A stretch of DNA of 64,000 bases from Octopus sinensis. Taxonomy: Eukaryota. The stretch spans positions 39,246,001 to 39,310,000 of the forward strand of contig NC_043001.1 of the NCBI RefSeq assembly GCF_006345805.1, written 5' to 3'. The notes beneath the pieces were generated by a model, which ran no database searches, was not told where the DNA came from, and saw nothing but the letters and a program-made list of their open reading frames with translations. Each line of letters starts with the position of its first letter. Position 1 is the stretch's first letter. Of this stretch, positions 1 through 62,215 are shown piece by piece. Position numbers and translations under genes: made by a program.

Positions 1-628
1 GAAATACCTCAGTTCTTTGGTCCTCACGTCGCTGGACATTGGCAAACTTCTTCTTTTCTGCTATATCTTTGGCTATGTATACCTGCCGCCCGGCCTCCCT
101 TTGGCTACTTGGTACGGTTCCCTGCTACCCCCATCCCTCCAGGCTCTCCAGGCCTGTTTCTTAGAACTAATGGCTTTGTCTACTGCACTATTCCACCACC
201 ATGTAACTCTAGGTCTGGAAGGAACTTTGCACCATCCACAGACTTGGTCTGTGGCACTCAGCAAGCTGTCCCGTAGGAATTTCCAGCTACCTTCTATGTC
301 CGACGTCTGTAGCTCCTCCTCCCTCTCATCAAATTTCTTGATGAGGATGTCCCTAAATCTCTGACCATGTGAAGGGTTCTTTAGCTTCCAAATCCTTCTT
401 TTCTGGATTGGTCTGTTTCTTGGAGTTCTTCTGGCCTCAAGCCTAAAGTCACTAATTATTAGCCTATGCTGAGGAATACACTCTTCACCCGGGAGGGTCT
501 TTGTATTTAAGAGCGACCCTGCATCCCGCTGTCTGGTGAGGATGAAGTCTATTTGGCTAGCGGAGTCCCCTGACTAATAGGTTATAAGGTGGCAGTCAGG
601 CTTCCTGAAGTTAGTGTTGCAGATTAAA
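1..628 (-). mobile_element. RTE-clade LINE fragment (end of endonuclease plus linker)
   Basis: Minus-strand VCGWCKVPSRPRVTWWWN... matches the copies at 27340 and 60200. Confidence 0.9.
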
Positions 629-629
629 A

Positions 630-1010
630 GGTTACATATACACATATATTTAGAAACAAATAAATACTTGAATTCCAACCAAGCTGAATGTAGAGCATGA
701 ATTCTTTATCCTCTCTTTGATATATCAGGGTAAAAAAACCAGAATTGTCTAATAAATTCAATTTGTATGAACTAACAGAAACAATAGAAATTCTGGTAAG
801 ATGTCATTTCGGAATTTGTGTTTGGAGAGAAAGTTCTTCAGTAAATTAGCCTTCAAGATTTTATTCCATAATCAAACTGCTAATTTTATTAGAGTAATTA
901 TATAAAAGTACTTACAGGGTGATTCACAGGATAAAATTTACTCTTATGTGTTTTGAGTTAGAAAAAGGTGTGGACCTAAATTAATTAATGCCAAGTAATT
1001 AATTTATTGG
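630..1010. repeat. Older diverged paralogue of 3120-3490 and 7820-8190
   Basis: Collinear similarity with many substitutions, e.g. gaatttgtgtttggagagaaagttcttcagtaaattagccttcaa versus ...gagacagttcttcagtaaattggccttcaa. Confidence 0.85.
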
Positions 1011-1028
1011 TTTTACTATTTCTGCCAG

Positions 1029-1090
1029 TCAAAAGTTAAGTTGATATCTGAAATTAATCATGTTACCATAAAAGCCATCCCAAGGTATGG
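1029..1090 (-). CDS. Probable terminal coding exon: (T)IPWDGFYGNMINFRYQLNF-stop
   Basis: Acceptor cttatttctcaag, phase 1. DGFYGNM resembles the a/b micro-exons. No donor precedes the TGA at 1031-1029, and AATAAA follows on the minus strand near 1003-1008. Confidence 0.7.
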
Positions 1091-1603
1091 CTTGAGAAAT
1101 AAGATATTTTGCATAATTACTTTCAAGCTAGAGCTGTCTAAAAACAACTGATTATAATGTGTCATATTCACCATTGCAAATCTCTTCCATATTTTATGTG
1201 TCTTGCCTGAATAAATATCTAGTGAATTTATTGTAAATTATATATTTACTTGGTTTACTAGTACAGCTAAGGCTTACAAAGCATATTCATGGGTTTGATT
1301 ATTAATGAGGATTAATAAAAGTACAAATTTTGTGTAGAATTTTAATATCTTTAATGTTGTACTTAAGTATATGCATATGCATATTATTTAACTATATATT
1401 TCACACAAAGGAAGAACAAGCCAAAATTTTTTTTATAATTTCACCAGAACTGATTTCAGTGATAGGGCTGGGAAATGAGTCTAAAACAAACAAATAACCC
1501 CACCCGTTTTGTCACAGCCCCTGACAGAAACTAAAATAAAATAAAAGGGTGAACTTGTGCTTTAATTAGTGTAATTGTATTAAAGGATTGTTTATACACT
1601 TAC

Positions 1604-1645
1604 TATCAGGTCTCCTTGAAATGTTACCATAAGCATCATCCATCT
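1604..1645 (-). CDS. Cytoplasmic micro-exon type a (42 bp, phase 1-1): MDDAYGNISRRPD
   Basis: Acceptor tttttatttcttaaag, donor A|GTAAGT. Contains YGNI. Confidence 0.8.
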
Positions 1646-2135
1646 CTTTAAGAAATAAAAATAATGAATGTAATATATAGCTATAAATAATATTTAAAAT
1701 ATATTGTATTGTGTTGAATCTTACAGAATAAAGACTAATGAGATAGACTCAAACACATGCACACACACACACGCTCACACACGCACATACATCTATACAT
1801 ACATACGTGTGTGTGTGTATGTATGTATGTATTTATATATACACAAGAATATGTGTGTCTTTGCGTTCATCTCCAGCCATCACTTGACAGTCATAGTTAG
1901 TTCACATCCACTGAACTTAGTGGTTTGGCACAGGAAATCAACAGAATAAGTACTAAGTTTAAAAATAAGTATTTTCATGGATTTGTTAGACTAAACCCTT
2001 CAAGGTAGTGCCCACAGTCCAATGGGTGAAACAAAACAAATATAAATGTCATATGTGAAGCTGCCTAAACCAAGATATTTGCTAACTCTTGCACTAATGA
2101 ATGTAATTTTATTAATGAATTTCTTATATACTTAC

Positions 2136-2177
2136 TACCAGGTATCTGTGAATCATTAACGTAAGCACCATCCATAT
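2136..2177 (-). CDS. Cytoplasmic micro-exon type b (42 bp, phase 1-1): MDGAYVNDSQIPG
   Basis: Acceptor tttttaatttcttaaag, donor A|GTAAGT. Contains YVND. Confidence 0.8.
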
Positions 2178-2299
2178 CTTTAAGAAATTAAAAAAAAAGA
2201 ATAAATAGCATAGCTATAAATAACATTTAAGTGATGTTAGTACTGTGCCAAATCTGCCATAATGCTAGAGAAATAGACTTAAACATTTTCACACACACT

Positions 2300-2822
2300 C
2301 TGCTTTGGACACTAAACTCTGCTTGCGAAGACTTGTTGAGGCAAGTGAAATCGAAATCAAATTCAATAACTGGCTTCCGTGCTAGTGGAGTGCTAAGAGT
2401 ACCATACGAGTGAGATCATAGCCAGAACAACAAGCTGGCCTCCGTGCCGATGGCATGTTAAAAACACCATTCGAGCGTGATCGTTACCTGCGTCGCCTTA
2501 TTGCACTTGTGCTGGTGGCTCGTGAAAAGACATTCGAGCAAGGTTGTTGGCAGTACTGCTGGACTGGCTCCTGTGCAGGTGGCACATAAAAAGCACCATT
2601 TGAGCATGGCTGTTGCCAGTACCGCCTGATCGACCCTCATGCCAGTGGCACGTAAGAGCATCCACTACACGCTTGGAGTGGTTGGTGTTAAGAAGGGCAT
2701 CCAGCTGTAGAAACTCTGCCAGATCAGATTGGAGTCTGGTGCAGCCATCTGGTTTGCCAGACCTCAGTCAAATCGTCCAACCCATTCTAGCATGGAAAGC
2801 GGACGTTAAACGATGATGACGC
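2300..2822 (+). mobile_element. 3' UTR / non-autonomous piece of the RTE-family LINE (duplicated at ~7020-7520)
   Basis: Ends ...gcatggaaagcggacgttaaacgatgatga, the same 3' end as the long LINE at 26370-29887. Confidence 0.85.
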
Positions 2823-2954
2823 TAATGATAATACATGTATGTATGCATATATCAAGAGCCAAAAGTTTGAGAGTGACATGTTTCATGATTGTTAGCTTTC
2901 TGTTTTTGTTATCCTATGATCATGCTATGTACTTCCAATATTGATTATACTTAC

Positions 2955-3014
2955 CTGGCTGTTTCATGCATAAATATCTGGGATCACTAATTTCTGTGCA
3001 CTGTTCTTCCACAG
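2955..3014 (-). CDS. Cytoplasmic micro-exon type c (60 bp, phase 1-1): VEEQCTEISDPRYLCMKQP
   Basis: Acceptor aattttttgaag, consensus donor CAG|GTAAGT. Contains YLCM. Confidence 0.82.
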
Positions 3015-3564
3015 CTTCAAAAAATTACATAAAAATAGGTATATTTATTGTTTGGAGAGTATGATTTAAATAAACTGATATTGCATAGAAAGTAACTAAA
3101 AATATAGGAAAACATACTGCATATTTCACATATATACATGTATATTTAGACAAAAATAAATATTTGAATTCGAACTCAGCTGAATGTAGGGTATGAGTTC
3201 TTTATCCTCTCATTGATGTACAGGGAAAAAGAAAAGAACTGCCTAATAAATTAACTTTGTATGAACAACAGGCAATAAAAGTAATTTTGGTAAAATTGCA
3301 TTTCAGAATTTGTGTTTGGAGAGACAGTTCTTCAGTAAATTGGCCTTCAAAATTTTATTCCATATTGAAACTGCTAATTTTATTAGAGAAATTATATAAA
3401 AGTACTAATGGCGTGGTTCACAGTTTAAAATTGGCTCTTAAGTGATTTGATCTCAGAATATTTTGGTTTTATATTAATTAATGCCAAGTAATTCCACAGA
3501 ATACAGTCTAACTAAATAGATTCACACACACACATGCACACAGACACACACACACATAACAATA

Positions 3565-5900
3565 CATACATCATCATCATCATCGTTTAATGCCCGTTTT
3601 CCATGATGGCTTGAGTTCTTCAGTTTGATTGAGGACTGGCAAGCCAGGAGCCACACCAGGTTCCAATCTGATCTGGCAGTGTTTCTACAGCTGGATGCCC
3701 TTCCTAATGCCAACCACTCCTAGAGTGTAGCGGATGCTTTTTACATGCCACTAGCATGGGAGCCAGTTAGGCGCAGCTGGCTTTGGCCACATTCAGATGG
3801 TACTTTTTATGTGCTATGGCTTTTTATGTGCTACTAGTCGGGACGGGGAGGCTGGCATCAAACATGTTTGGATGGTGCTTTTTACATGCCACCAGCTTGG
3901 AAAGCCAGTCAGGCAGTACTGGCAATGACCCACGCATGCATGGTACATATTGCATGCCACCAGTATGGGAGCCAGTCAGGTAGCACTGGCATCTGCCACA
4001 ACTACAATTCGATTTGATTATATTTTGATTTTACTTGACTCAATAGGTCTCCTCAAGCGCAGAATGTTGCTTGACAATTCAAAGGTACTTTTTAAATGGG
4101 CTGGTTATGCAACACTGGTGTAGGCTACAGCTGTGATCTCACTTTACTTACTGGGTCTTCTCAGTAATAGCATACCTCCAGAGGTCTCAGTCTATTGTCA
4201 TTGCCTCTGTGAGGCCCAACGTTCGAAGGTCATGCTTCACCCTAATCACATTTTATGTCTTACTGAGTCTCCTTCTTCCATGGGTTCCTTCCACTGTTAG
4301 GGAGTGACACTTCTTCACACAGTTCTCCTCATCTGTATGCAGCACATGACCATACCAGCACAGTCATCTCTCTTGCACTCTATGTCCAATGCTTATGTCC
4401 ATTTCTCTCAGGGCACTTACACTCTGTACTGTGTGCACATTGACATTACACATCAAGTGGATCCAACTAGCTTTATTTCTTTCAAGCCTATGCATGTCTT
4501 CAGCAGTCATGGCCCATGTTTCACTGTTATTTAGCATGGCAGTTCACACGCATGCATCATACAATCTACCTTTCACTCTGAGTGAGAAATCCTTTGTCAC
4601 CAGTAGAGGTAGGAGCTTTCTGAACTTTGCCCAGGCTATTCTTATTCTAGTGGCAATGCTCTCTGAACATCTACCCCCACTGCAGACTAAGTAATGGAAG
4701 CTATCAACTATTGAGTTGATGCATAATTATTGCGGCTTTTTTCAAGAAATTTTATTCAACAAAAACAATAATAACATGTAACAAAAACATCTTTAAATGA
4801 TTATTCCAGAGCATATTCACTATCTACTTCAATTACTGCTTCCCATTTGCTTGGCAGACTGTCAGACTGTCATTTAAAGATGTTTTTGTTAAATATTATT
4901 ATTTTTGTTGAATAAAATTTGTCGAAAAAATGCCGCAATAATTATGCACCGACCCATTATTTCTAGTTTTTCCCCCTGTCATGTGATGGAATCAGTCTTA
5001 TGAGCATCTGCAGGGTTTATTGCCCCTGTGCACACAAAAGCTATCTTCCTGGTTAACATACCTTTGATGTGCTGCACCACTTATGCATCCATAGCTTACA
5101 CTGTGTACATCTTATAGAGTTTCTACCTACACCTTTTATACACACCGGGCAGGGCCACCTACCTGAAGGGGTATGTGATGTGTTCGCCTTCATATGTAAT
5201 AGGACTTTGGTCTTTGTGACATTGACTCTAAGGCCCTTCAATTCTAAACCTTGCTTCCACATCTGAAATTTCTTCTCTAGTTCTGGTAGTGATCCTGCTA
5301 TGAAAGCAAGGTCATCAGCATAGAGGATCTCCCACTGTTATTGCCTGGAGGACTATGATGAATAAGAAGGGGGATGAGGACTGATCCTTGGTGAACCCCT
5401 ACTTCTACCTGGAATTCTTTACTATACTCATTGCCGACTCTTATCTTACTAACAACATCCCTGTACAAGACCTGTATAGCTCTTATTAACCACTCGTCTA
5501 TCCCCAGTTTCTGCATTGCTCACCAGATAAAGGCTTGAGGGAATCCGTCAAAGGCTTTCTGCAAGTCAACAAAAGCCAAGTATAGGGTTTATCTTTGGTT
5601 AGGTATTACTCCTATTGTTGCTGTACCAGGTATATAGCATCAGTGGTGCTTCTACCTGACACAAAACAGAATTGCATCTCATCTAAGCAGACTCTCTTCC
5701 TAATTAGTTAGGCTATGATCCTCTCTGTGACCTTCATAACCTGATCCAGCAGTTTGATATCCCTGTAGTTATTTCTATCTAAAGCATCACCTTTACATTT
5801 GTAGCAGCTGACTATGGTGCTGCTATGCCATTAATTAGGTATGACGTCTTTGTGAATTACCTGGTTTACAATACGGGTGACTAGGCCATGACCCACACCA
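3565..5900 (-). mobile_element. Degraded RTE LINE (RT plus 3' UTR) interrupted by a MITE; duplicated at ~8270-10605
   Basis: Minus-strand KLGIDEWLIRAIQVLYRD...GVHQGSVL and GRWPCPVCIKGVGRNSIRCTQC; (CAT)n tail at the left end. Confidence 0.9.
4711..4957. mobile_element. Tc1/mariner-type MITE, 247 bp, TA target-site duplication
   Basis: Imperfect ~80 bp TIRs (gatgcataattattgcggc... / ...gccgcaataattatgcacc), flanked by TA on both sides, splitting LINE sequence ctatcaacTA|tttctag. Confidence 0.9.
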
Positions 5901-6298
5901 CCAGATATTTTAAACATATATTTTAAGATATAATGTGCATTATATCTTTGCTTGGTTTACTGGTACAGCTAAGGCTTACAAAGACGATGTATTGGCTGGA
6001 TTATTAATGAAGATGAATAAAGATGTAAATTATGTGTATAATTCTAAATATTTTCAATTTTGCATTTAAGTACATGCATACGAATCTTCTTAAGCCATAC
6101 AGAAAGTAAGAACAAACCAAAATTTTTGTTAACTTCCCCAGAACTGATTTCAGTGATAGGGCTGGGAAATGAGTCTAAAACAAACAAATAACCCCACCCC
6201 GTTTTGTCACAGCCCCTGACAGAAACTAAAATAAAATAAAAGGGTGAACTTGTGCTTTAATTAGTGTAATTGTATTAAAGGATTGTTTATACACTTAC

Positions 6299-6340
6299 TA
6301 TCAGGTCTCCTTGAAATGTTACCATAAGCATCATCCATCT
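6299..6340 (-). CDS. Cytoplasmic micro-exon type a (42 bp, phase 1-1): MDDAYGNISRRPD
   Basis: Acceptor tttttatttcttaaag, donor A|GTAAGT. Contains YGNI. Confidence 0.78.
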
Positions 6341-6830
6341 CTTTAAGAAATAAAAATAATGAATGTAATATATAGCTATAAATAATATTTAAAATATATT
6401 GTATTGTGTTGAATCTTACAGAATAAAGACTAATGAGATAGACTCAAACACATGCACACACACACACGCTCACACACGCACATACATCTATACATACATA
6501 CATACGTGTGTGTGTGTATGTATGTATTTATATATACACAAGAATATGTGTGTCTTTGCGTTCATCTCCAGCCATCACTTGACAGTCATAGTTAGTTCAC
6601 ATCCACTGAACTTAGTGGTTTGGCACAGGAAATCAACAGAATAAGTACTAAGTTTAAAAATAAGTATTTTCATGGATTTGTTAGACTAAACCCTTCAAGG
6701 TAGTGCCCACAGTCCAATGGGTGAAACAAAACAAATATAAATGTCATATGTGAAGCTGCCTAAACCAAGATATTTGCTAACTCTTGCACTAATGAATGTA
6801 ATTTTATTAATGAATTTCTTATATACTTAC

Positions 6831-6872
6831 TACCAGGTATCTGTGAATCATTAACGTAAGCACCATCCATAT
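6831..6872 (-). CDS. Cytoplasmic micro-exon type b (42 bp, phase 1-1): MDGAYVNDSQIPG
   Basis: Acceptor tttttaatttcttaaag, donor A|GTAAGT. Contains YVND. Confidence 0.78.
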
Positions 6873-7654
6873 CTTTAAGAAATTAAAAAAAAAGAATAAA
6901 TAGCATAGCTATAAATAACATTTAAGTGACGTTAGTACTGTGCCAAATCTGCCATAATAAATGCTAGAGAAATTGACTTAAACAATTTCACACACACTCT
7001 GCTTTGGACACTAAACTCTGCTTGCGAAGACTTGTTGAGGCAAGTGAAATGAAAATCAAAATCGATGACTGGCTTCCGTGCTAGTGGAGTGCTAAGAGTA
7101 CCATACGAGTGAGATCGTAGCCAGAACAACAAGCTGGCCTCCGTGCCGATGGCATGTTAAAAACACCATTCGAGCGTGATCGTTACCTGCATCACCTTAC
7201 TAGCACTTGTGCTGGTGGCTTGTGAAAAGACATTCGAGCAAGGTTGTTGGCAGTACTGCTGGACTGGCTCCTGTGCAGGTGGCACATAAAAAGCACCATT
7301 TGAGCATGGCTGTTGCCAGTACCGCCTGATCGACCCTCATGCCAGTGGCACGTAAAAGCATCCACTACACGCTCGGAGTGGTTGGTGTTAAGAAGGGCAT
7401 CCAGCTGTAGAAACTCTGCCAGATCAGATTGGAGTCTGGTGCAGCCATCTGGTTTGCCAGCCCTCAGTCAAATCGTCCAACCCATTCTAGCATGGAAAGC
7501 GGACATTAAACGATGATGATGCTAATGATAATACATGTATGTATGCATATATCAAGAGCCAAAAGTTTGAGAGTGACATGTTTCATGATTGTTAGCTTTC
7601 TATTTTTGTTATCCTATGATCATGCTATGTACTTCCAATATTGTTTATACTTAC

Positions 7655-7714
7655 GTGGCTGTTTCATGCATAAATATCTGGGATCACTAATTTCTGTGCA
7701 CTGTTCTTCCACAG
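7655..7714 (-). CDS. Cytoplasmic micro-exon type c (60 bp, phase 1-1): VEEQCTEISDPRYLCMKQP
   Basis: Acceptor aattttttgaag, donor CAC|GTAAGT. Contains YLCM (YxxM). Confidence 0.75.
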
Positions 7715-9414
7715 CTTCAAAAAATTACATAAAAATAGGTATATTTATTGTTTGGAGAGTATGATTTAAATAAACTGATATTGCATAGAAAGTAACTAAA
7801 AATATAGGAAAACATACTGCATATTTCACATATATATACATGTATATTTAGACAAAAATAAATATTTGAATTCGAACTTAGCTGAATGTAGGGTATGAGT
7901 TCTTTATCCTCTCATTGATGTACAGGGAAAAAGAAAAGAACTGCCTAATAAATTAACTTTGTATGAACAACAGGCAATAAAAGTAATTTTGGTAAAATTG
8001 CATTTCAGAATTTGTGTTTGGAGAGACAGTTCTTCAGTAAATTGGCCTTCAAAATTTTATTCCATATTGAAACTGCTAATTTTATTAGAGAAATTATATA
8101 AAAGTACTAATGGCGTGGTTCACAGTTTAAAATTGGCTCTTAAGTGATTTGATCTCAGAATATTTTAGTTCTATATTAATTAATGCCAAGTAATTCCACA
8201 GAATACAGTCTAACTAAACAGATTCACACACACACATGCACACAGACACACACACACATAACAATACATACATCATCATCATCATTGTTTAATGCCCGCT
8301 TTCCATGATGGCTTGAGTTCTTCAGTTTGATTGAGGACTGGCAAGCCAGGAGCCACACCAGGTTCCAATCTGATCTGGCAGTGTTTCTACAGCTGGATGC
8401 TCTTCCTAATGCCAACCACTCCTAGAGTGTAGCGGATGCTTTTTACATGCCACTAGCATGGGAGCCAGTTAGGCGCAGCTGGCTTTGGCCACATTTGGTT
8501 GGTACTTTTTATGTGCTATGGCTTTTTATGTGCTACTAGTCGGGATGGGGAGGCTGGCATCAAACATGTTTGGTTGGTGCTTTTTACATGCCACCAACAT
8601 GGAAAGCCAGTCAGGCAGTACTGGCAATGACCCACGCATGCATGGTACTTAGTGCATGCCACCAGTATGGGAGCCAGTCAGGTAGCACTGGCATCTGCCA
8701 CAACTACAATTCGATTTGATTATATTTTGATTTTACTTGACTCAACAGGTCTCCTCAAGAGCAGAATGTTACTTGACAATTCAAGGTACTTTTTAAATGG
8801 GCTGGTCATGCAACACTGGTGTAGGCTACAGCTGTGATCTCACTTTACTTACTGGGTCTTCTCAGTTATAGCATACCTCCAGAGGTCTCAGTCTATTGTC
8901 ATTGCCTCTGTGAGGCCCAACGTTCAAAGGTCATGCTTCACCCTAACCACATTTTATGTCTTACTGAGTCTCCTTCTTCCATGGGTTCCTTCCACTGTTA
9001 GGGAGTGACACTTCTTCACACAGTTCTCCTCATCTGTATGCAGCACATGACCATACCAGCACAGTCATCTCTCTTGCACTCTACGTCCAATGCTTATGTC
9101 CAACATTTCTCTCAGGGCACTTACACTCCGTACTGTGTGCACATTGACATTACACATCAAGTGGATCCAACTAGCTTTATTTCTTTCAAGCCTATGCATG
9201 TCTTCAGCAGTCATGGCCCATGTTTCACTGTTATTTAGCTTGGCAGTTCACACACATGCATCATACAATCTACCTTTCACTCTGAGTGAGAAATCCTTTG
9301 TCACCAGTAGAGGTAGGAGCTTTCTGAACTTTGCCCAGGCTATTCTTATTCTAGTGGCAATGCTCTCTGAACATCTACCCCCAATGCAGACTAAGTAGCG
9401 GAAGCTATCAACTA

Positions 9415-9661
9415 TTGGGTTGATGCATAATTATTGCGGCTTTTTTCAAGAAATTTTATTCAACAAAAACAATAACAACATGTAACAAAAACATCTTTAA
9501 ATGATTATTCCGGAGCATATTCACTATCTACTTCAATTACTGCTTCCCATTTGCTTGACAGACTGTCAGACTGTCATTTAAAGATGTTTTTGTTAAATAT
9601 TATTATTTTTGTTGAATAAAATTTGTCGAAAAAATGCCGCAATAATTATGCACCGACCCAT
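9415..9661. mobile_element. Duplicate copy of the 247 bp mariner-type MITE
   Basis: Same TIRs and TA TSD at the equivalent position of the second 4.7 kb unit. Confidence 0.9.
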
Positions 9662-11010
9662 TATTTCTAGTTTCTCCCCCTGTCATGTGATGGAATCAGT
9701 CTTATGAGCATCTGCAGGGTTTATTGCCCCTGTGCACACAAAAGCTATCTTCCTGGTTAACATACCTTTGATGTGCTGCACCACTTTTGCATCCATAGCT
9801 TACACTGGGTACATCTTATAGAGTTTCTACCTACACCTTTTATACACACCGGGCAGGGCCACCTACCAGAAGGGGTGTGTGATGTGTTCGCCTTCATATG
9901 TACTAGGACTTTGGTCTTTGTGACATTGACTCTAAGGCCCTTCAACTCTAAACCTTGCTTCCACATCTGAAATTTCTTCTCTAGTTCTGGTAGTGATCCT
10001 GCTATGAAAGCAAGGTCATCAGCATAGAGGATCTCCCACTGTTATTGCCTGGAGGACTATGATGAATAAGAAGGGGGATGAGGACTGATCCTTGGTGAAC
10101 CCCTACTTCTACCTGGAATTCTTTACTATACTCATTGCCGACTCTTATCTTACTAACAACATCCCTGTACAAGACCTGTATAGCTCTTATTAACCACTCG
10201 TCTATCCCCAGTTTCTGCATTGCTCACCAGATAAAGGCTTGAGGGAATCTGTCAAAGGCTTTCTGCAAGTCAACAAAAGCCAAGTATAGGGGTTTATCTT
10301 TGGTTAGGTATTACTCCTATTGTTGCTGTACCAGGAATATAGCATCAGTGGTGCTTCTACCTGACACAAAACCGAATTGCATCTCATCTAAGCAGACTCT
10401 CTTCCTAATTAGTTGGGCTATGATCCTCTCTGTGACCTTCATCACCTGATCCAGCAGTTTGATATCCCTGTAGTTATTTCTATCTAAAGCATCACCTTTA
10501 CATTTGTAGCAGCTGACTATGGTGCTGCTATGCCATTAATTAGGTATGACTTCTTTGTGAATTACCTGGTTTACAATACGGGTGACTAGGCCATGACCCA
10601 CACCACCAGATATTTTAAGCATATATTTTAAGATATAATGTGAATTATATCTTTGCTTGGTTTACTGGTACAGCTAAGGCTTACAAGGAAGATGTATGGG
10701 CTGGATTATTAATGAAGATGAATAAAGATGTAAATTACATGTATAATTCTAAATATTTTCAATGTTGCATTTAAGTACATGCATACGAATCTTCTGAAGC
10801 CATATATTTTACAGAAAGTAAGAACAAACCAAAATTTTTGCTAACTTCACCAGAACTGATTTCAGGGATAGGGCTGGGAAATGAGTCTAAAACAAACAAA
10901 TAACCCCACCCCGTTTTGTCACAGCCCCTGACAGAAACTAAAATAAAATAAAAGGGTGAACTTGTGCTTTAATTAGTGTAATTGTATTAAAGGATTGTTT
11001 ATACACTTAC

Positions 11011-11052
11011 TATCAGGTTTCCTTGAAATGTTACCATAAGCATCATCCATGT
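11011..11052 (-). CDS. Cytoplasmic micro-exon type a (42 bp, phase 1-1): MDDAYGNISRKPD
   Basis: Acceptor tttttatttcttaaag, donor A|GTAAGT. Frame open, contains YGNI. Confidence 0.8.
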
Positions 11053-11679
11053 CTTTAAGAAATAAAAATAATGAATATAATACATAGCTATAAATAACAG
11101 TTAAAATATATAGTATTGTGCTGATACTATCAGAATAAAGACTAATGAGATAGAATGAAACACATGCACACACAGCGACACACAGACACATGCACACACA
11201 TAAGTATAAACATGTGTTTCAGGTGTAAGTTTTAATTTCTAATTCTTAGATAAGAAACTTTCTTATTCCCTCATGAGGAAAGTTAAAGAACAAGATATTT
11301 ACTGCTCAATCAATGTTACTTAAACAAAATTCCACAAATCATGTCATGATTCACTATTTTTCCCATTTCGATTTCTTCTCAAATGACAAATTCCCAGTAA
11401 CTTCTATTAAAATGATTTTTGACACCATCATTCTTAACAATTAACTGACTAATCAATGTTCTAAACTAAAGCAAGAGAGAGTCATGTACAAGTGCTTAAT
11501 GACACATTTGGAATTACTGATCATTAAGCATTAGAGGCATTCAAGTGCCCTCCATGGAATGTTATTAAATATGAAGATTCTTCCTAACATGGACCCCACA
11601 TAGGAAACAGTTGTTCTAGTAAACAGAAGTATCATGGGTAAATCATTTAAGGTTATGAAAATAAAGAAAGTCTTCATAA

Positions 11680-11740
<61 letters not shown>

Positions 11741-11899
11741 GTGTATGTGTATATATACATTAATAACTTTGCCATTCTCTCTCATTTTTTGGTCCTTTTT
11801 CCAGCATGTATAATTATAAATTTATTCTCCTCTACCTTCACCACCATCTAAAAAAACACTTTACCACACTTTCTTTCAGCTGATTTCAGCCTTCTATTA

Positions 11900-14800
11900 A
11901 TCTTTTTCCCTACTGATTTCCAAAAAAACACGCTTTTGTAATTATGTTTCCTTTCTCGCTCTTTGCCTTCACCACTACCTCATCTCCGAAGGTTTCCACC
12001 TCTATTTCCACTCTACTTTCCATTCTGCCTCTGCCATCTTACTCTGTCACCTTATGCCTGCCACCATTCATTCTAATCACTCCAAAATACACACCCTTAA
12101 CCACCTTCTCCTACTTGCTTATTCCACCTTTTTTTCCTACTGCTCACCATTTATTGCACATTCCACCTTATGTTTCATCTTCCATCTGAACCACCTTTTC
12201 CATGACTTCCTCGCTTGCACTAAACAACATAAACTCCACTCACTCTTTCATCCTGTCCCACCTGATGCCACTAAACCCACCCCTCATTCCCACCCTTCCA
12301 CATACCACTTCCTCCTCTGTCTCCTTCCAGCCTTCCATTACTTCCACCATCCCTCCCCCACCGAGCTCATCCCCCCACTTCAGTCTGTTGTTACCATTCC
12401 TCCTGAACTCTCCTCTCTGAAGTAGATTTCTCTCTTCCCAATAAGGGTCTGCACTTCATTCCTCTCATACCATCCAGTAACAAGTTTCAGACTCATGCTA
12501 TTATCCTACACTTTGTGCACTACGTCAGGCTACATACACTATTCCACAACAGTCCACCTCCATCTAATGAAGAAGACTGTTTCACCCACTTCACCCACAA
12601 ATGGTACCAGCTCCTGGTCAGTTCCAAGCAGTTGATCAATTTGCAAGCATTTGCCAACATGTTGTGGACCGGTTCAACTTTTGCAGGTGTCCCTGACATT
12701 TTTTAACACCTCTCCAGCTGAACTCTCAGTCCTTCGATGTCTCTGGTGCCACAAACTGGCCAACAAGGGTGGAGTTATAGTGGTGTGGTGCACAGACTTT
12801 TACAAGGCTGAAGCTCTCCGTCAGCTTCAAGTCACCTCCTTCTATTGCCCTCTGCCCTCCAACCTCATGCCTAACTACCAACAGATTGCCCTCCACTATT
12901 CATGACTTCATTTCCTCCTTCCATCTCTCTCCTACCACCTCCAACCTCATTGTCCATATCCCACACACTCACACTATTTACTTCCTTTCCAAAGTTCACA
13001 AGCCCAACAACCCTGGCTACCCCAATCATCTCCACCTGCAACTGCCCCACTGAAATGATCTCCAAATACCTTAACCATGTCCTTGCCCCCTAGTGACTTC
13101 CCTCCCCTCACACACCCATGACACCAATCATGCTTTCTCTCTGTTTAACACTTTCTCCTTCCCTTCTAGCCCCTCTCAACTTTTCATTCATGTTGGAGTT
13201 TTACCAACAGGTCTTGGGAGTGAGAATGAGAATGGGCACCAACTATGCAAACCTGTTCGCTGGCTATGTTGAGGCCCAAATATTCTCCCAGTTCACTGGT
13301 CACACTCCAGCTATATGGTCACTATATTGATGACTGTACAGGCATGACCTGACTCTCCTGCAAACAACTGGACTTCTTCCTAACTTTGTCCAATCCTTCC
13401 ATCTTGCCCTCAAATTCTCCTGCACTATCTCTAACTCTTTCGTCAAATTTCTCAACATTTTTCTCAGCATACACCACTGTGCTCTCATTACCTCCATCCA
13501 CTACAAACACACTGACTCACACTCCTACCTTAGCTTATTCTCCTCTCACCCAACCCACACCAAGTTCTCCATCACCTACTCCCAATTCCTCCATCTACGT
13601 AAGCTCTGCAGTGACGACCATGACTTTGGGGCTCAGTCTCAACTCATGGCTCACCACGTCATAATACATGGATATCTCCTCACCATTATCCACACTGCCC
13701 TTGCTCATGCCTGATTTGTGGACCATGCTTCTGCTCTTTCTCCTCACTTATCACCCCTGCAACGCACCATTCTCTGAGCCTTCTGGCAACTCCAGCCCGA
13801 CCCCTCCACTTCACACATCTTTCCTAACTTACCTGTTCTCTCCTTAAAATAAGCCCATAACCTGTGTGACCTTCTGGTCCACAGTCTCTTCCCTACCCCT
13901 GCATCACAACCTGGTTCCTTCCTCTGCTCCTGTCCATGCTGTCACACCTGCCCCTACTTCTCCATCACCACCATCTTCACTGGCACCCATAACTGTCCCT
14001 GTCACATCACCGACTCCTTTGCCTGCACCTCTACTAATGTTATTTACTACATCTCATGCTCTTTCTGTCCTTCTTTATATATTGTTCAAAAGGGACACCA
14101 CTTGGCTGACTGGTTCGCAGAGCACCTCCAAGACATCAGACAATGACAGCCCAGTCTCACACCACTTCCTCTCTACTGGTTGTTCACTACAATATTTGTT
14201 TGTGTTGGAACTTTCTCTGCACTGGGGCCACCTGGACACTTGCCTTCACTGTGAACAGGAATTAATTTTCTCTTTTCATTCCTTTGCACCATATGGGATT
14301 AACTCACTTCTTATCTTCATTTGGTACCAACGCCACATGGATTCCCACACACCTCCCACATTTAACTCCCCCTTTCTACTAACACACCTACACATCACCT
14401 ACCTCAGTACCCTCACCACACACACATAACTATAAAATCACTCATACACACTTGTCAACACATTACTCACTTCACACACCACTATACACAACACTACACC
14501 GACCACTCCCCAGATACTCACAGGTCACCAACACATCTTCAATAGCGTCAAACCACACATAACACAAAATGCGAGCAGCCACACACCTGTTTTTTTAACT
14601 AAGTACAACACCGAAACACAACCATCATGCACACTCCCACACCCATACAAGCACATATTACCTGAACACAGACAATATATACACACACATGCAACATGCA
14701 TAAATACATGCATAAACAAAGATAACTTTCACCCACATATGCTATATACATGCCCACTATTTGGCCACAGAGATACATACACATGCATGTGCACGCACCT

Positions 14801-15180
14801 TCTGAACAAGCACACATGCACTGCTACATGCAAAATCACACATACACATGTTAGACTCACTTTTCCCCATTCACACATACAGACTCGAATACACACACAT
14901 GCTTGTGCATCTTAGTTTGTTGGGGTTACCATTACCATTATTATATTATCTCCATTTCATTCAACCTATTTTTTCCAGTCATCTCATCATGTCGGACCAT
15001 TGAACTCTGCAAACATTTTCTCTCTAGGTTTTTTTCATTCTCCCTCCAGTTTTTGCCTCTTAATCATTTCTCTCAAAGAGCTTAGGCTCAGCACATAAAA
15101 GACTTTTCCATTTTTCCCAAGCGTTAAATTAATACACCTGTTTGTTGTTTCCTACACGTTTTTCATCTTTTGTTTCCTGC
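11900..15180 (+). mobile_element. Degraded Penelope-like element (RT + GIY-YIG + CA-rich tail)
   Basis: Remnants FPKFTSPTTLATPIISTCNCPTEMISKYLNHVLAP and MGTNYANLFAGYVE..YIDD (PLE RT), then NVIYYIXCSLCPSLYIVQ...LADWFAEHL (GIY-YIG). Boundaries approximate. Confidence 0.85.
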
Positions 15181-15189
15181 TATAATATA

Positions 15190-15499
15190 TACACCATGAT
15201 CACGTGACCGACCAGACCATCAATGTTGTGTACACATCGATCACAATTGGTTCGCATTGTTGTTTGACCTTCAATGACGCGCACCCCGCTGGCTAAGCGA
15301 GTCAGGCCATAAGAAGAGTGGGAGAAAGAGTGGTTAGAAGATTACGGACAGGGATCACCACCCCCTGCCGAGCCTCGTGGAGCTTTTAGGTGTTTTCGTT
15401 CATAAACGACACAAACGCCCGGTCTGGGAGATTGAAACCAGGGGGCGATCCTGCAGACCGCGATTCCGCTGGCCTAAACCACTAGGCCATTGCGCCTCC
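15190..15499 (-). mobile_element. tRNA-derived SINE
   Basis: Minus-strand head tggaggcgcaatggcctagtggtttagg with an A-box (TGGCCTAGTGG) and a degenerate B-box (ggtttcaatctcc). Confidence 0.8.
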
Positions 15500-15543
15500 A
15501 CACACACACTATATTATATATATATATTATATATAATATATAT

Positions 15544-15589
<46 letters not shown>

Positions 15590-15593
<4 letters not shown>

Positions 15594-17000
15594 TGCTGGC
15601 CAAAATTTAGATCAGTGAAAAAAACTGCTGCCAAAATGAACTCCTTTCAGACTGATATATTTGACTACTTTTTCATTATAGATTCATAATTAGCAAATAG
15701 AAAAGATATACAAAACCTAAAGAAATGTTTAAATTTAATGCAGAAAATATGGATTGTATGAAAATGAAAAATTTAAGTCCATGACAAATAAAAAGTTTGA
15801 ATTGGGTATAGTCTATAAAAATTTTGGCATTTATGTTCAAGCTTTCTGTGTGTCAACAACTGCCAGTCACTCCCTATCTATTACACAACAGCAACAATGA
15901 GCAAATCTAAAATGTTGATGGATTTTGAACATGGTAGACTTGCAGAGCTCCAGATACAAAGCCTTTCTCAACATGCCATCTCCACTGAAATTGGTTGCAG
16001 TAAAATCTCCATTGCAAACTTCTTAAAAGACCCTGCGGCATACAGATAGAAAAGATTGACTAGCTGGCCAAAGAAAATTTCACTTGCATTTAGTAGGATT
16101 TGACGGAAAGTTAGGAAAGGCACTAGTTGATCATCAAACTAGATTAATGTACTTATGGATGTGGAATGTAGCTCAAGGAAGGTAAGATAACATTTGAGAG
16201 AGAGATAGAGAGAGGCTTAAAAAATCTTGAATGTCTTCAGAGACCTCATCTTCATCCATACCTCAAAACTACTTGTTTAGAATTTGCTCAGAATCAGCAG
16301 ACCTAGGATGTTTACAACTGGAAGAAAGTTTAATCCTGGGATGAGAAAAAATTCAGCCCTGATGGTCCTGATGGTCTCCAACAATATTGGCATGCAAAAG
16401 ATATTCCACTGGAGACTTTTTCAAATAAGCACAGTGGTGGAGGCTGTGTCATGGTGTGGGGTGCTTTCTTGAACAGAAGAACTATGGAACATTAGGTTGC
16501 GCAGAGACATCAAACAGCAGCTGGCTATGTTGGCATATTGGCACAGGCATCACTATTGACTGAAGGCTCTCGTTTGTGTGAAGAAGACTGGATTTATCAA
16601 CAGGGTAATACTACAATCCATAATTCTCGCAGGCCAAAGGATTTCTTCAGAACAAATAACATTCATCTTTTGAATCATCTTCCATGTTCTCCTGACTGAA
16701 ACCTCATTGAAAATCTTTGAGGATGGACGGCAAGAGATGTTTACAAGAATGAATTGCATTTTGAGACTGTGGATGCTCTTTGCTTAACAGTCCTCACCTT
16801 ATGGCATAACATTCTGGACAACCTCCGATAAAATGCTTGTTTTGAGTATGCCACAGCAAATTTTTGAAGTTATTCACAGGAATGGGGTAGAGCAACTAAC
16901 TACTAAGTACCCTTGTTTACTATTTATTCATTTATGTTTTTGTTATTTGTCATGGTGTTGACCAAGCAAAATATTGTTAGTTTTAATACAATGCATATTT
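15590..17000 (+). mobile_element. Decayed Tc1-family (Tc3-like) transposon
   Basis: Remnants [35 protein letters not shown] and PPCSPDXNLIENL, with stops and frameshifts. Confidence 0.88.
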
Positions 17001-39116: not shown

Positions 39117-39627
39117 TCTATATATATAAAACTGTAGTTGTGTGAGTGTCTGTCTCCTACGATTTAGATTCCTAACTCCTCCCACATTTTGCGGTGCAGT
39201 TTAACCAAATTCAGGTATCTTATAGTCGTGATTAATATCAAGCCCGTCTGGCTATTAGCGCACGTCTACGATGAGTCTACGATTTTAAAAATAATTTACA
39301 CTCATTTTTTATTCCATTTTAATGCATAATTTTTCGTGTGTCGATGCGGCGGAGTTGGCGTCCACGCTCAACACCTGCACCTGTTTTTGCTTCTCCCCTC
39401 TTCCCTCCCTCGTGAAGCGTTGGGGAAGGGAGTTTAGGAAATCAACGTCGTAATGCGTTGTCAAGGAGACCAGCGTTCTTTTAGAACACGACTTCATGGC
39501 TTGAAGACACCAAAACAGAAATGGCTAAGAAAGCCCGAATTGGCATCTATAAAGGAAGTAACTCTCTAAAAATGCTTATATAGTTATTTCCCTTACAAAC
39601 CCGAGCAACGCTGGGCGATACTGCTAG
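39117..39627 (+). mobile_element. Complete non-autonomous Helitron, 511 bp
   Basis: A|TCTATATATATAAAA 5' end; 3' hairpin cccgagc-aac-gctggg then CTAG|T; inserted between A and T with no TSD. Confidence 0.88.
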
Positions 39628-39749
39628 TTATATATATATTAATTGAATATATTCTTTTGCTTGTTTCACTAATTAGACCGTGGCCATGCAGATGCACCAC
39701 CTTGAAGTGTTCTGTCAAACAAACCGAATCCAGTACTTATTTTTAAACC

Positions 39750-50886: not shown

Positions 50887-50992
50887 ACCTCTTATTTTTG
50901 TGGCATTTTATAAGCAAGAAGCCCCACAATTTTAATAATAATATACAGTTCCTACACTGCAACCAATAATCATTCCACAAGAGTTCCATATT
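50887..50992 (-). pseudogene. Frameshifted duplicate of the transmembrane exon (probably an assembly artefact)
   Basis: Same sequence as 52045-52149 but with several 1-2 bp indels that break the frame. Lies in the first copy of the 49951-52270 tandem duplication. Boundaries approximate. Confidence 0.7.
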
Positions 50993-52044: not shown

Positions 52045-52149
52045 CTCTTATTTTGTGGCATTTATAAGCAAGAAGCCCCACAATTATTAATAATAATACA
52101 GTTCCTACACTGCAACCAATAATCATTCCCAAAGAGAGTTCCATAATTT
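52045..52149 (-). CDS. Transmembrane exon (phase 1-1, 105 bp)
   Basis: Acceptor tatatcttttcag and donor AGAG|GTTGGT. Encodes (E)IMELSLGMIIGCSVGTVLLLIIVGLLAYKCHKIR, a hydrophobic helix followed by a basic stop-transfer segment. Joins in frame to the 56242 exon. Confidence 0.85.
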
Positions 52150-52299
52150 CTGAAAAGATATATTAAAAAGACTTTGCATTATTACATTAATAAGATAAAA
52201 GGTTATGAAGAATTTTTCAAAAATTATTGTCTTGTATTGTAAGGTCAATAGACACTGGGATACACAGTTGCTGCTGAAAACTTCAAAAACAATAAAAAT

Positions 52300-56241: not shown

Positions 56242-56550
56242 CTTTAGATCTCAAGTCAAAAATAATTATTTCTTTTCCTATGGAGTTTTCCACTATTAAT
56301 TGATATGTACAAAAATCATTAGCTTTGATGTCTTCTATCTTTAAACTAGTACAGCTTCCTTTGAAAGGAAACTCATTTGATAAATAATCAGTTGTTAAAT
56401 ATTTGTTTGAGTCAATTAATTTGTCATTTATTTGCCATTTTACATCAGATTTTGGATGTGAATAAAAACACTGTTTGAAAATTACAGATTCTCCAATTGC
56501 AACATTTCTCATTTTAGGATCGTTTGATATTGAACTGAAAATAGGTTTCA
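56242..56550 (-). CDS. Membrane-proximal Ig-like (I-set-like) domain exon (phase 1-1, 309 bp)
   Basis: ORF 56201..56551. Acceptor ttttttcttcaaccag and donor AAAG|GTAAGT. Translation KPIF...VIFKQCFYSHPKSDVKWQIND...SLKIEDIKANDFCTYQLIVENSIG...DLRSK follows Ig strand spacing. Confidence 0.9.
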
Positions 56551-58460: not shown

Positions 58461-58712
58461 CTGGAATTTTGTAGTTTGATGATTTACTCACATGAAAATA
58501 TTCATTGCTTACATGACACTCCCATGTACCAGTATTATTGAAAGTAGAATTGTTTATAGATAATACATTTATATTATAAGTATTCTTAGTGGTGTTTCCC
58601 CATTTTTGCTCCAGTTTGTATTCATAATTTGGTGGAATTCCATCAAATGCAGTGCAATTAATTATTATATTATTTGTCTCATTTGAAATATGAATGTTTA
58701 CTTGAGGAGGAT
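58461..58712 (-). CDS. Ig-like domain exon (phase 1-1, 252 bp) of a type I IgSF receptor
   Basis: Acceptor ttttttaag. Open frame xPPQVNIHISNETNNIIINCTAFDGIPPNYEYKLEQKWGNTTKNTYNINVLSINNSTFNNTGTWECHVSNEYFHVSKSSNYKIP has the Ig Cys...Trp...(TG-W-x-C) pattern and several N-x-S/T sequons. It ends at CAG|GCAAGT (GC donor), in phase with the next exon. Not in the ORF track. Confidence 0.85.
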
Positions 58713-59557: not shown

Positions 59558-59810
59558 TTCATCATCATCATCATCGTTTAATGTTCACTTTCCATGCTAG
59601 CATGGGTTGGACGATTTGAGTGAGGACTGGTGAACCAGATGGCTGCACCATGCTCCAATCTGATCTGGTAGAGTTTCTACAGCTGGATGCCCTTCCTAAC
59701 ACCAACCACTCTGAGATTCTAGTGGGTGCTTTTATGTGCCACCGGCACGATGGCCAGTCAGGCAGTACTGGCAACGGCCACGCTCAAATGGTGTTTTTTA
59801 CGTGCCACCT
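59558..59810 (-). mobile_element. RTE LINE 3' UTR fragment
   Basis: catcatcatcgtttaatgttcactttccatgctagcatggg. Confidence 0.85.
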
Positions 59811-62190: not shown

Positions 62191-62215
62191 AGAGTAGAGT
62201 CACTATTATATATTC

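What the first reader, a model, noticed from the sequence alone, without database searches (positions are those of the whole stretch)
1444..11170. 4.7 kb tandem duplication adds an in-frame three-tyrosine signalling cassette
Seen: each 4.7 kb unit is almost all LINE, MITE and SINE but contains exactly three micro-exons, c (60 bp), b (42 bp) and a (42 bp). These total 144 bp = 48 aa and are all phase 1-1, so any gain or loss of a unit preserves the frame. The units differ mostly by substitutions. They look nearly identical at the left end and more diverged toward the right end and in the third partial unit. Inference: unequal crossover between the older paralogous blocks around exon a produced the extra unit, so the number of YxN/YxxM docking sites may be a copy-number polymorphism that tunes receptor output.
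Basis: partly seen in the sequence, partly recalled or inferred. Interest (0 to 1): 0.8.

Follow-up and report, generated by a model that had tools for sequence, protein, structure and literature searches.

The report
Tandem duplication lengthens octopus receptor tail
A 4.7-kb stretch inside an octopus cell-surface receptor gene has been copied head to tail by unequal recombination, adding 48 in-frame amino acids with three tyrosine motifs to the receptor's inner tail; this is a well-known kind of event in an unstudied gene family.

Summary
Window 1444-6137 and 6138-10849 are head-to-tail copies of 4694 and 4712 nt, followed by a partial third copy to about 11201. The recently duplicated core differs by 73 substitutions and 7 indels (1.63%).

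The gene is on the minus strand. Each unit carries micro-exons c (60 nt), b (42 nt) and a (42 nt). All are phase 1-1 with consensus splice signals. They encode RYLCM, AYVND and AYGNI.

The window is almost certainly Octopus sinensis. My spliced prediction of seven exons occurs verbatim in RefSeq LOC115212116.

The middle 570-nt "a-block" is a clean chimera. Left of position 6134 it matches the right-hand block at 41 of 46 informative sites. Right of 6153 it matches the left-hand block at 33 of 34. This is the signature of non-allelic homologous recombination.

The O. bimaculoides orthologue has the block-unit-block arrangement only once. The O. vulgaris orthologue's annotated protein has three b-a pairs, against two here. 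Paralogues carry their own amplified tail modules.

The duplication mechanism is supported. The signalling role (YxN and YxxM docking) and within-species polymorphism are untested. An assembly artefact is unlikely but cannot be excluded without reads.

This is a new member of a known kind, of modest interest.

The parts
1444..6137 (.). Tandem unit 1 (4694 nt), downstream in the transcript; contains exons c1, b1 and a1
6138..10849 (.). Tandem unit 2 (4712 nt), upstream in the transcript; contains exons c2, b2 and a2
10850..11201 (.). Partial third copy: the right part of the old a-block A3; contains exon a3
1226..1800 (.). a-block A1, an old low-copy repeat. Its orthologue is O. bimaculoides L003 62376-63516 (89.8% identity)
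5928..6495 (.). a-block A2, the chimeric recombinant. It is A3-like to the left and A1-like to the right
   Evidence: left of 6137, 41 sites A2=A3 vs 5 A2=A1; right of 6137, 33 sites A2=A1 vs 1 A2=A3
10633..11210 (.). a-block A3, an old low-copy repeat. Its orthologue is O. bimaculoides L003 55812-56379 (89.5% identity)
6134..6153 (.). Most parsimonious crossover interval. The widest possible interval is 6134-6306, inside the near-identical core shared by all three blocks
1604..1645 (-). Micro-exon a1, 42 nt, phase 1-1, encoding MDDAYGNISRRPD
   Evidence: present in P0011
2136..2177 (-). Micro-exon b1, 42 nt, phase 1-1, encoding MDGAYVNDSQIPG
2955..3014 (-). Micro-exon c1, 60 nt, phase 1-1, encoding VEEQCTEISDPRYLCMKQP. 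The last base is G, giving Asp at the junction
6299..6340 (-). Micro-exon a2, identical to a1
6831..6872 (-). Micro-exon b2, identical to b1
7655..7714 (-). Micro-exon c2, 59/60 identical to c1. The last base is C, giving His at the junction
11011..11052 (-). Micro-exon a3, 40/42 identical to a1, encoding MDDAYGNISRKPD
634..1000 (-). Copy of the upstream flank of a c-type exon (83% identical to 3128-3493). The expected exon position is occupied by a LINE fragment (76-573). It corresponds to the flank of the O. bimaculoides c exon at L003 63642
52045..52149 (-). Transmembrane exon of the same gene, 105 nt, phase 1-1. Its last base G plus the AC at the start of a3 gives Asp, as in the orthologues
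56242..56550 (-). Ig (I-set) exon, 309 nt, phase 1-1
58461..58712 (-). Ig exon, 252 nt, phase 1-1, with a GC donor

Best explanation
The window is part of a cluster of octopus-specific immunoglobulin-superfamily receptor genes. It is almost certainly Octopus sinensis. The gene runs on the minus strand: Ig exons, a transmembrane exon, then a cytoplasmic tail assembled from tiny symmetric (phase 1-1) exons.

The tail uses two exon types. The a/b type is 42 nt and encodes [ML]D-x-A-Y-x-N. The c type is 60 nt and encodes ...P-x-Y-[LV]-C-M-K-x-P.

Before the event the local order in the transcript was a3 - c - b - a1. The two a-exons sat in roughly 570-nt paralogous blocks 4.7 kb apart. These blocks are 88% identical overall and share a near-identical core.

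Misaligned homologous recombination between the upstream block on one chromatid and the downstream block on the other produced a3 - c - b - a(chimeric block) - c - b - a1. This duplicated 4.7 kb, of which 3% is exon and the rest mostly transposon debris. It inserted 48 residues in frame, carrying YLCM, YVND and YGNI.

The copies have since drifted to 1.6% divergence. The long mismatch-free tracts around the a and b exons look like later gene conversion.

Shown here: the duplication, the chimera, the exon phases, the single-copy outgroup state, and the presence of both cassettes in an annotated protein.

Inferred only: that the tyrosines are phosphorylated and recruit SH2 adaptors (Grb2/Drk type at pYxN, PI3K p85 type at pYxxM), so that more cassettes mean more docking sites.
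For: Tandem structure and low indel load.

Chimeric middle block with one switch point.

Exons and phases.

Exact match to an annotated protein. The predicted product DMDDAYGNISRKPD-TVEEQCTEISDPRYLCMKQP-HMDGAYVNDSQIPG-KMDDAYGNISRRPD-TVEEQ...KQP-DMDGAYVNDSQIPG-KMDDAYGNISRRPD, including the His/Asp junction difference, occurs in O. sinensis LOC115212116 (P0011).

Outgroup. In O. bimaculoides L003 both O. sinensis units map to one interval, 59164-62330, at 86-91% identity. That includes the LINE fragment. A1 and A3 each have their own orthologous block.

Orthologue tail order in O. bimaculoides is a-c'-c-b-a-c-b.

The O. vulgaris orthologue (P0013/P0023) has three b-a pairs with two distinct b variants.

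The same process occurs in a paralogue. Three c exons are 60/60 nt identical although their upstream flanks are about 90% identical. A 5.0-kb tandem duplication is present in both the O. sinensis and O. vulgaris assemblies.

Asn at +2 is kept in all 8 a-type exons compared.
Against: No reads were available. The unit divergence (1.63%) is close to the genome-wide heterozygosity reported for O. vulgaris (1.22%, PMC10700109). Divergence alone therefore does not exclude two haplotypes laid in tandem.

The right-end block (5928-6137 vs 10633-10849) is 4.8% diverged, three times the core (p=0.004). A single recent event does not predict this.

The RefSeq model holding the tail spans 780 kb and is chimeric. 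Splicing from the window's own TM exon to a3 is therefore inferred from the O. bimaculoides orthologue, not seen.

The O. bimaculoides assembly is gappy and built from short reads, so a young duplicate could be collapsed there.

Two a-type exons of the O. bimaculoides orthologue lack the Tyr.

No transcript or phosphorylation data were examined.
Confidence: 0.8

Rival explanations
1. Assembly artefact. The true sequence is block-unit-block, and the assembler went round the cycle twice, once for each haplotype. Units 1 and 2 would then be alleles.
For: The three blocks share a near-identical core of about 150 nt that could mislead an assembler. Unit divergence of 1.63% lies within the range of octopus heterozygosity (1.22% in O. 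vulgaris). The same gene holds a second, indel-ridden 1.16-kb tandem duplication (24 indels to 40 substitutions) that looks like unpolished long-read noise. This assembly therefore does have local problems.
Against: The window has no Ns or gaps. The indel:substitution ratio of the 4.7-kb copies is 7:73, unlike the noisy region. The annotated O. vulgaris orthologue, from an independent ONT assembly, has three b-a pairs with two different b sequences; two alleles cannot produce that. Similar tandem duplications in the paralogue occur identically in two independent assemblies. The right-end block is 4.8% diverged and carries a 7-nt indel.
Confidence: 0.1
2. The DNA duplication is real but has no effect on the protein. 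The extra exons are skipped, or the local gene is a decaying member of the cluster whose tail exons are only captured by read-through models.
For: The only O. sinensis model with these exons is a 780-kb chimeric model that omits the window's own Ig and TM exons. The O. vulgaris model skips two of three expected c exons and replaces the TM exon with a non-homologous ORF. All exons are symmetric, so skipping costs nothing.
Against: All seven exons keep consensus acceptors and gtaagt donors, and the a and b exons are identical between units. Divergence within 150 nt of the exons is lower than elsewhere (8/1040 vs 65/3427, p=0.011). The Ig and TM exons in the window are open and phase-compatible. 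The O. bimaculoides orthologue model joins Ig, TM and tail.
Confidence: 0.2
3. The duplication is older than it looks, or arose more than once. A two-unit (or larger) array already existed in the common ancestor of O. sinensis and O. vulgaris. It has since been homogenised by gene conversion and resized by further unequal exchanges. It is not one recent event.
For: Unit divergence (1.63%) exceeds the O. sinensis-O. vulgaris substitution divergence at a neighbouring locus (0.41%). O. vulgaris has b variants MDSAYVNDSQTPG (x2) and MDGAYVNDSQIPG (x1), while both O. sinensis b exons are the latter. There are mismatch-free tracts of 347 and 416 nt over the a and b exons and patchy identity elsewhere. 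The edge block is 4.8% diverged.
Against: This refines the main explanation rather than contradicting it. The chimeric block still points to NAHR as the founding event. O. vulgaris DNA could not be retrieved, so the unit count there rests on a protein model.
Confidence: 0.45
4. The tyrosine modules do not act as YxN/YxxM adaptor sites. They act as paired ITAM-like or ITIM-like motifs for tandem-SH2 kinases or phosphatases.
For: Consecutive 14-residue modules place tyrosines 14 residues apart (YVND-x10-YGNI). Many a-type exons read YxN[ILV], which is also Yxx[ILV]. A paralogue ends in NYAEL...TIYADL.
Against: In the b-a pair of this unit the first half is YVND, with Asp at +3, so it fails YxxL/I. 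The -2 position of the a and b tyrosines is D or G, not I/V/L/S, so the ITIM pattern fails. The invariant residue across a-type exons is Asn at +2, which defines the Grb2-type site.
Confidence: 0.15

Closest known systems
Chicken BG (butyrophilin-like) genes of the MHC
   Same: These are single-pass IgSF membrane proteins. Their cytoplasmic tail is encoded by many tiny exons whose number varies between genes (13 to 36). The family expands and contracts by unequal crossing-over (NAHR) (PMC4046983).
   Different: BG tail exons are 21 nt (sometimes 24) and encode heptad repeats of a coiled coil, not tyrosine motifs. The variation described there is mostly between genes and haplotypes. Here the exons are 42 and 60 nt with one Tyr motif each, and the repeat unit is 4.7 kb of mostly transposon-derived intron.
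NAHR-generated hybrids and copy-number variants in KIR and LILR immunoreceptor clusters
   Same: Unequal crossover between paralogous repeats produces chimeric junctions and changes in copy number in IgSF receptor loci (titles and abstracts of PMC3460180 and PMC11130398).
   Different: Those events duplicate, delete or fuse whole genes. Here the exchange is inside one gene and changes the number of tail modules.
PECAM-1 (CD31) cytoplasmic domain (from my own knowledge, not checked here)
   Same: The tail of an IgSF receptor is encoded by a run of short exons that carry tyrosine motifs and can be skipped without breaking the frame.
   Different: The PECAM-1 exons are not recent tandem duplicates of each other. 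Its motifs are ITIM/ITSM.
CD28 YMNM and DAP10 YINM motifs (from my own knowledge, not checked here)
   Same: Short tails use pYxN to bind the Grb2 SH2 domain and pYxxM to bind PI3K p85. These are the two motif classes found in the a/b and c exons.
   Different: In CD28 and DAP10 one tyrosine serves both motifs. Here the motifs are on separate exons. There is no homology and no binding data for the octopus protein.

Membership tests
Tandem segmental duplication by non-allelic homologous recombination | Two head-to-tail copies with no spacer | tested here: met
   1444-6137 and 6138-10849 abut each other. 96.7% identity over 5273 nt.
Tandem segmental duplication by non-allelic homologous recombination | Pre-existing paralogous repeats bracket the duplicated segment | tested here: met
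   A1 and A3 are 87.7% identical. Each has a separate orthologue in O. bimaculoides (89.8% and 89.5%).
Tandem segmental duplication by non-allelic homologous recombination | The junction repeat is a chimera with a single switch inside the homology | tested here: met
   Left of 6137: 41 A3-type vs 5 A1-type sites. Right of 6137: 33 A1-type vs 1 A3-type. The switch lies in 6134-6153.
Tandem segmental duplication by non-allelic homologous recombination | A related genome shows the unduplicated state | tested here: met
   Both units map to the single interval L003 59164-62330 in O. bimaculoides. Caveat: that assembly is gappy and built from short reads.
Tandem segmental duplication by non-allelic homologous recombination | Reads span the junction and depth is normal | not testable with these tools
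   No read data. A Logan look-up of a window ORF found nothing.
In-frame duplication of symmetric exons | All duplicated exons share the same phase at both ends, and their total length is a multiple of 3 | tested here: met
   Exons of 60, 42 and 42 nt, all phase 1-1. The TM and Ig exons are also phase 1-1.
In-frame duplication of symmetric exons | Both copies appear in a mature coding sequence | tested here: inconclusive
   Both cassettes are in RefSeq protein LOC115212116 (P0011). That is a predicted, 780-kb chimeric model. No transcript reads were seen.
Type I immunoglobulin-superfamily receptor | Extracellular Ig domains | tested here: met
   The exon at 56249-56554 hits Pfam I-set above the cut-off (35.8 vs 23.7 bits). 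The exon at 58456-58713 hits Ig_3/ig just below the cut-off.
Type I immunoglobulin-superfamily receptor | A single transmembrane helix followed by a basic stop-transfer sequence and a cytoplasmic tail | tested here: met
   LSLGMIIGCSVGTVLLLIIVGLLAY followed by KCHKIR. The signal peptide lies outside the window and is seen only in orthologues and paralogues.
Grb2-type (pYxN) and PI3K p85-type (pYxxM) SH2 docking sites | Sequence pattern Y-x-N or Y-x-x-M in a cytoplasmic segment | tested here: met
   a: YGN; b: YVN; c: YLCM. Asn +2 is kept in 8/8 a-type exons compared and Tyr in 7/8.
Grb2-type (pYxN) and PI3K p85-type (pYxxM) SH2 docking sites | Tyrosine phosphorylation and SH2 binding | not testable with these tools
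   Needs biochemistry.
ITAM | YxxL/I - x(6-12) - YxxL/I | tested here: not met
   The b-a pair gives YVND-x10-YGNI. The first half has Asp at +3.
ITIM | [SIVL]-x-Y-x-x-[IVL] | tested here: not met
   Position -2 is D (exon a), G (exon b) or P (exon c).

The most novel reading that the evidence does not exclude
The tails of a whole octopus-specific cluster of IgSF receptors are arrays of symmetric 42- and 60-nt micro-exons, each carrying one tyrosine motif. These arrays gain, lose and homogenise modules by unequal exchange and gene conversion very quickly. Sister species about 0.4% apart, and perhaps individuals, would then differ in module number. Tail length would be a heritable, selectable gain control on receptor signalling.
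Probability: 0.2. Interest if true: 0.6.

Novelty: new member of a known kind. Interest (0 to 1): 0.35.

Why it matters
This is a very clean natural example of how a receptor tail can grow in whole, frame-safe signalling modules. It has symmetric micro-exons, a pre-existing repeat pair, a chimeric junction and an outgroup with the ancestral state.

It also shows that the public gene models for this octopus IgSF cluster are unreliable. One is a 780-kb chimeric model, and another lacks the TM exon.

The cluster as a whole shows repeated, independent amplification of tail modules. If module number varies within populations and alters signalling, the family would be a tractable invertebrate case of copy-number tuning of an immune-type or adhesion-type receptor. 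As it stands the mechanism is textbook and the function is unknown.

Tried and rejected
1. I first took locus L001 (O. sinensis LOC115212119) for the orthologue from another species, because its introns are 73-87% identical to the window. I rejected this when P0011 of O. sinensis turned out to hold the window's tail verbatim. L001 is a paralogue in the same cluster.

2. Protein searches gave false negatives. One search missed P0011 and P0013. One search, a tail-only query, returned nothing even though P0011 contains most of that query word for word. These nulls say nothing about transcripts or relatives.

4. O. vulgaris DNA for the orthologous tail could not be fetched. There was no record for P0013, and the gene range of P0023 (184 kb) is too long. 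The O. sinensis gene range (780 kb) is also too long.

5. A look-up of the window's Ig2 ORF in read-based assemblies found nothing.

6. I scanned 11.2-52 kb for further a/b/c-type exons and found none. The extra exon x of O. bimaculoides (L003 43626) has no match in the window.

7. Rfam found no RNA family in the window.

8. The argument that the units are too diverged to be alleles was weakened by the published 1.22% heterozygosity of O. vulgaris.

9. ITAM and ITIM readings of the motifs fail their patterns.

Full report
OBSERVATION

A self-comparison of window 1-16000 shows one long direct repeat. 1237-6487 aligns to 5939-11201 at 96.7% over 5273 nt. Repeat families are spaced 4695-4712 nt apart. 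There are no Ns in the window.

Aligning the copies separates three zones:
- 1226-1443 vs 5928-6137 is only about 80% identical.
- 1444-5927 vs 6138-10632 is the young core. It has 73 substitutions in 4467 columns (1.63%; 49 transitions, 24 transversions, 26 in CpG context) and 7 small indels.
- 5928-6137 vs 10633-10849 has 10 substitutions in 210 nt plus a 7-nt indel (4.8%).

Beyond about 6300/11010 the third, partial copy drops to old-paralogue identity.

Its "left nearly identical, right more diverged" is right at the two ends. The interior is patchy, with mismatch-free tracts of 347, 416, 222+288 and 304 nt. The variance/mean ratio of mismatch counts is 1.96, and the third-largest gap has p=0.003.

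THE EXONS

The gene is on the minus strand.
- c: 2955-3014 and 7655-7714 (60 nt), VEEQCTEISDPRYLCMKQP
- b: 2136-2177 and 6831-6872 (42 nt), MDGAYVNDSQIPG
- a: 1604-1645, 6299-6340 and 11011-11052 (42 nt), MDDAYGNISR(R/K)PD

All have pyrimidine-rich acceptors ending in aag and gtaagt donors. All are phase 1-1. A 20-nt a/b-type pattern matches 5 times, against 0.06 expected by chance. One unit adds 144 nt = 48 aa.

Upstream on the same strand lie:
- two Ig exons, 58461-58712 and 56242-56550; the second passes the Pfam I-set cut-off
- a transmembrane exon, 52045-52149

These are also phase 1-1. The last base of the TM exon plus the first two of a3 gives Asp, as in the orthologues. The 3' end of the gene lies beyond the left edge of the window.

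WHAT THE LOCUS IS

Homology searches returned only octopus proteins, all uncharacterised IgSF members.

The decisive hit is O. sinensis LOC115212116 (P0011). Its C-terminal part contains my predicted seven-exon splice product letter for letter, including the His versus Asp junction residue caused by the single c1/c2 difference. The window is therefore almost certainly O. sinensis.

That RefSeq model spans 780 kb and stitches several cluster members together. It shows the exons are recognised by the annotation pipeline. It is not proof of a transcript.

The orthologues are:
- O. vulgaris P0013/P0023, whose Ig exons differ from the window by one residue
- O. bimaculoides LOC106874055 (P0018/P0024), which joins Ig, TM and a tail of the same module types

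MECHANISM

The three roughly 570-nt blocks around exon a are A1 (1226-1800), A2 (5928-6495) and A3 (10633-11210). I aligned them together.

Left of position 6137, A2 agrees with A3 at 41 informative sites and with A1 at 5. Right of it, A2 agrees with A1 at 33 sites and with A3 at 1. That one exception is the length of a C run. The switch falls in 6134-6153, inside a core that is almost identical in all three blocks.

Unequal crossover between A3 on one chromatid and A1 on the other predicts exactly this pattern.

The O. bimaculoides orthologous locus (L003) supplies the ancestral state. A3 matches L003 55812-56379 (89.5%) and A1 matches L003 62376-63516 (89.8%). Both O. sinensis units, LINE fragment included, map to the single interval 59164-62330 at 86-91%.

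The repeats that recombined are therefore older than the species split, and the extra unit is derived. One caveat applies: L003 is gappy and built from short reads, so a young duplicate could be collapsed there.

AGE AND LATER HISTORY

Unit divergence (1.63%) is about one eighth of the O. sinensis-O. bimaculoides divergence in the same DNA. It is about four times the O. sinensis-O. vulgaris substitution divergence measured on 68 kb of a neighbouring paralogue (0.41%).

In line with this, the O. vulgaris orthologue's annotated tail has three b-a pairs. Two have b = MDSAYVNDSQTPG and one has b = MDGAYVNDSQIPG. Both O. sinensis b exons are the latter form.

Three further observations bear on the history:
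- The mismatch-free tracts lie over the a and b exons.
- Divergence near the exons is lower than elsewhere (8/1040 vs 65/3427, p=0.011).
- Divergence at the array edge is higher (4.8%, p=0.004).

Taken together, the array most likely predates the sinensis/vulgaris split. It has since been partly homogenised by gene conversion in O. sinensis and resized in one lineage or the other. This rests on a protein model, because the O. vulgaris DNA could not be fetched.

IS IT AN ARTEFACT?

Without reads I cannot exclude two haplotypes laid in tandem. The divergence is close to the 1.22% heterozygosity published for O. vulgaris.

The same gene also contains a separate 1.16-kb tandem duplication (49950-51107 / 51110-52269). 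Its copies differ by 24 indels and 40 substitutions, which looks like unpolished long-read noise.

Four things argue against an artefact for the 4.7-kb repeat:
- Its indel:substitution ratio is 7:73.
- There are no gaps.
- The 4.8% edge block carries a 7-nt indel.
- The independent O. vulgaris annotation has three b-a pairs of two sequence types.

I put the artefact at about 10%.

FAMILY CONTEXT

The paralogue LOC115212119 (L001) and its O. vulgaris counterpart (L002) carry three c-type exons that are 60/60 nt identical, although their upstream flanks are about 90% identical. With 10% divergence, the chance of no change in 60 nt is about 0.002.

Both assemblies also show a 5.0-kb tandem duplication at 97%.

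Other cluster members show their own repeats: [c+a]x5, [c+a]x2, a 14-residue LYAKVNKP module x4, and MEEEQYAE...YLEL x5. O. sinensis L001 also holds an a-type pseudo-exon with a destroyed donor.

Module gain, homogenisation and loss are thus general traits of this cluster. The window's event is one instance.

FUNCTION (INFERRED)

The motifs are YGN and YVN (Y-x-N) and YLCM (Y-x-x-M). Across eight a-type exons from two loci, Asn at +2 is invariant and Tyr is kept in seven. From general knowledge, pYxN is the Grb2/Drk SH2 site and pYxxM the PI3K p85 site.

ITAM and ITIM patterns are not met.

The O. bimaculoides orthologue has Y-to-N and Y-to-H changes in two a-type exons, so individual modules are dispensable.

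No phosphorylation, binding or expression data were available.

COMPARISON AND VERDICT

The closest described system is the chicken BG family. These are IgSF membrane proteins whose tails are encoded by 13-36 exons of 21 nt, in a family that expands and contracts by NAHR (PMC4046983). KIR/LILR hybrids are the classic NAHR cases in immunoreceptor clusters. PECAM-1 and the CD28/DAP10 motifs are functional analogies from memory.

The event is a new member of a known kind. The signalling and polymorphism claims remain hypotheses.

Noticed in passing
window 49950-51107 and 51110-52269: A second, separate tandem duplication (unit about 1160 nt, 95.8% identity) includes the TM exon. The downstream TM copy (about 50935-51040) carries several 1-nt indels. 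Across the two 1.16-kb copies there are 24 indel events to 40 substitutions, unlike the 4.7-kb repeat. It is either a decaying pseudo-exon or unpolished long-read noise.
   Followed up: partly
window 26406-26699 (-): An ORF with no Pfam hit is used as a coding exon in the O. vulgaris orthologue models (P0013/P0023) in place of the TM exon. The annotated protein would then lack a membrane anchor. This is probably an annotation artefact.
   Followed up: partly
O. sinensis LOC115212116 (P0011), gene range 780 kb: The RefSeq model that contains the window's tail joins Ig and TM exons and a [c+a]x5 tail from other cluster members to the window's tail exons. It omits the window's own Ig and TM exons. 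It is a chimeric read-through model.
   Followed up: partly
window 39548-39636 vs L001 27564-27652: An 89-nt stretch is 97.8% identical between introns of two paralogues whose neighbouring intron sequence is about 85% identical. It could be a conserved element, a young transposon piece or a conversion tract.
   Followed up: no
L001 about 61537-61578 (O. sinensis paralogue); also L002 96109-96144: An a-type pseudo-exon (VDVAYVNLPRRPN) has an intact acceptor, but its donor has changed from gtaagt to ttaact. It is absent from the annotated protein. This is an example of module loss.
   Followed up: partly
window 58461 (Ig1 exon donor): The first Ig exon in the window ends ...CCAG|gcaagt, a GC-AG intron. 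The junction codon agrees with the orthologue proteins.
   Followed up: partly
window 634-1000 and 76-573: There is a copy of the upstream flank of a c-type exon, but the c exon itself is missing. A LINE fragment sits where the exon is expected. The matching position in O. bimaculoides has an intact c exon (L003 63642).
   Followed up: partly
P0014 (O. vulgaris paralogue) C-terminus: A paralogue tail ends in ...ECNYAELEF...ETIYADLILDS, which resembles ITIM/ITSM patterns. It follows four copies of a DDVxxLYAKVNKP module. Cluster members may therefore differ in signalling type.
   Followed up: no
window 12000-14500: There is a strong strand asymmetry (GC skew -0.52, GC 0.48) with long Pro/Ser/Thr-rich open frames on the plus strand and no convincing Pfam hit. 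It is probably a decayed repeat.
   Followed up: partly
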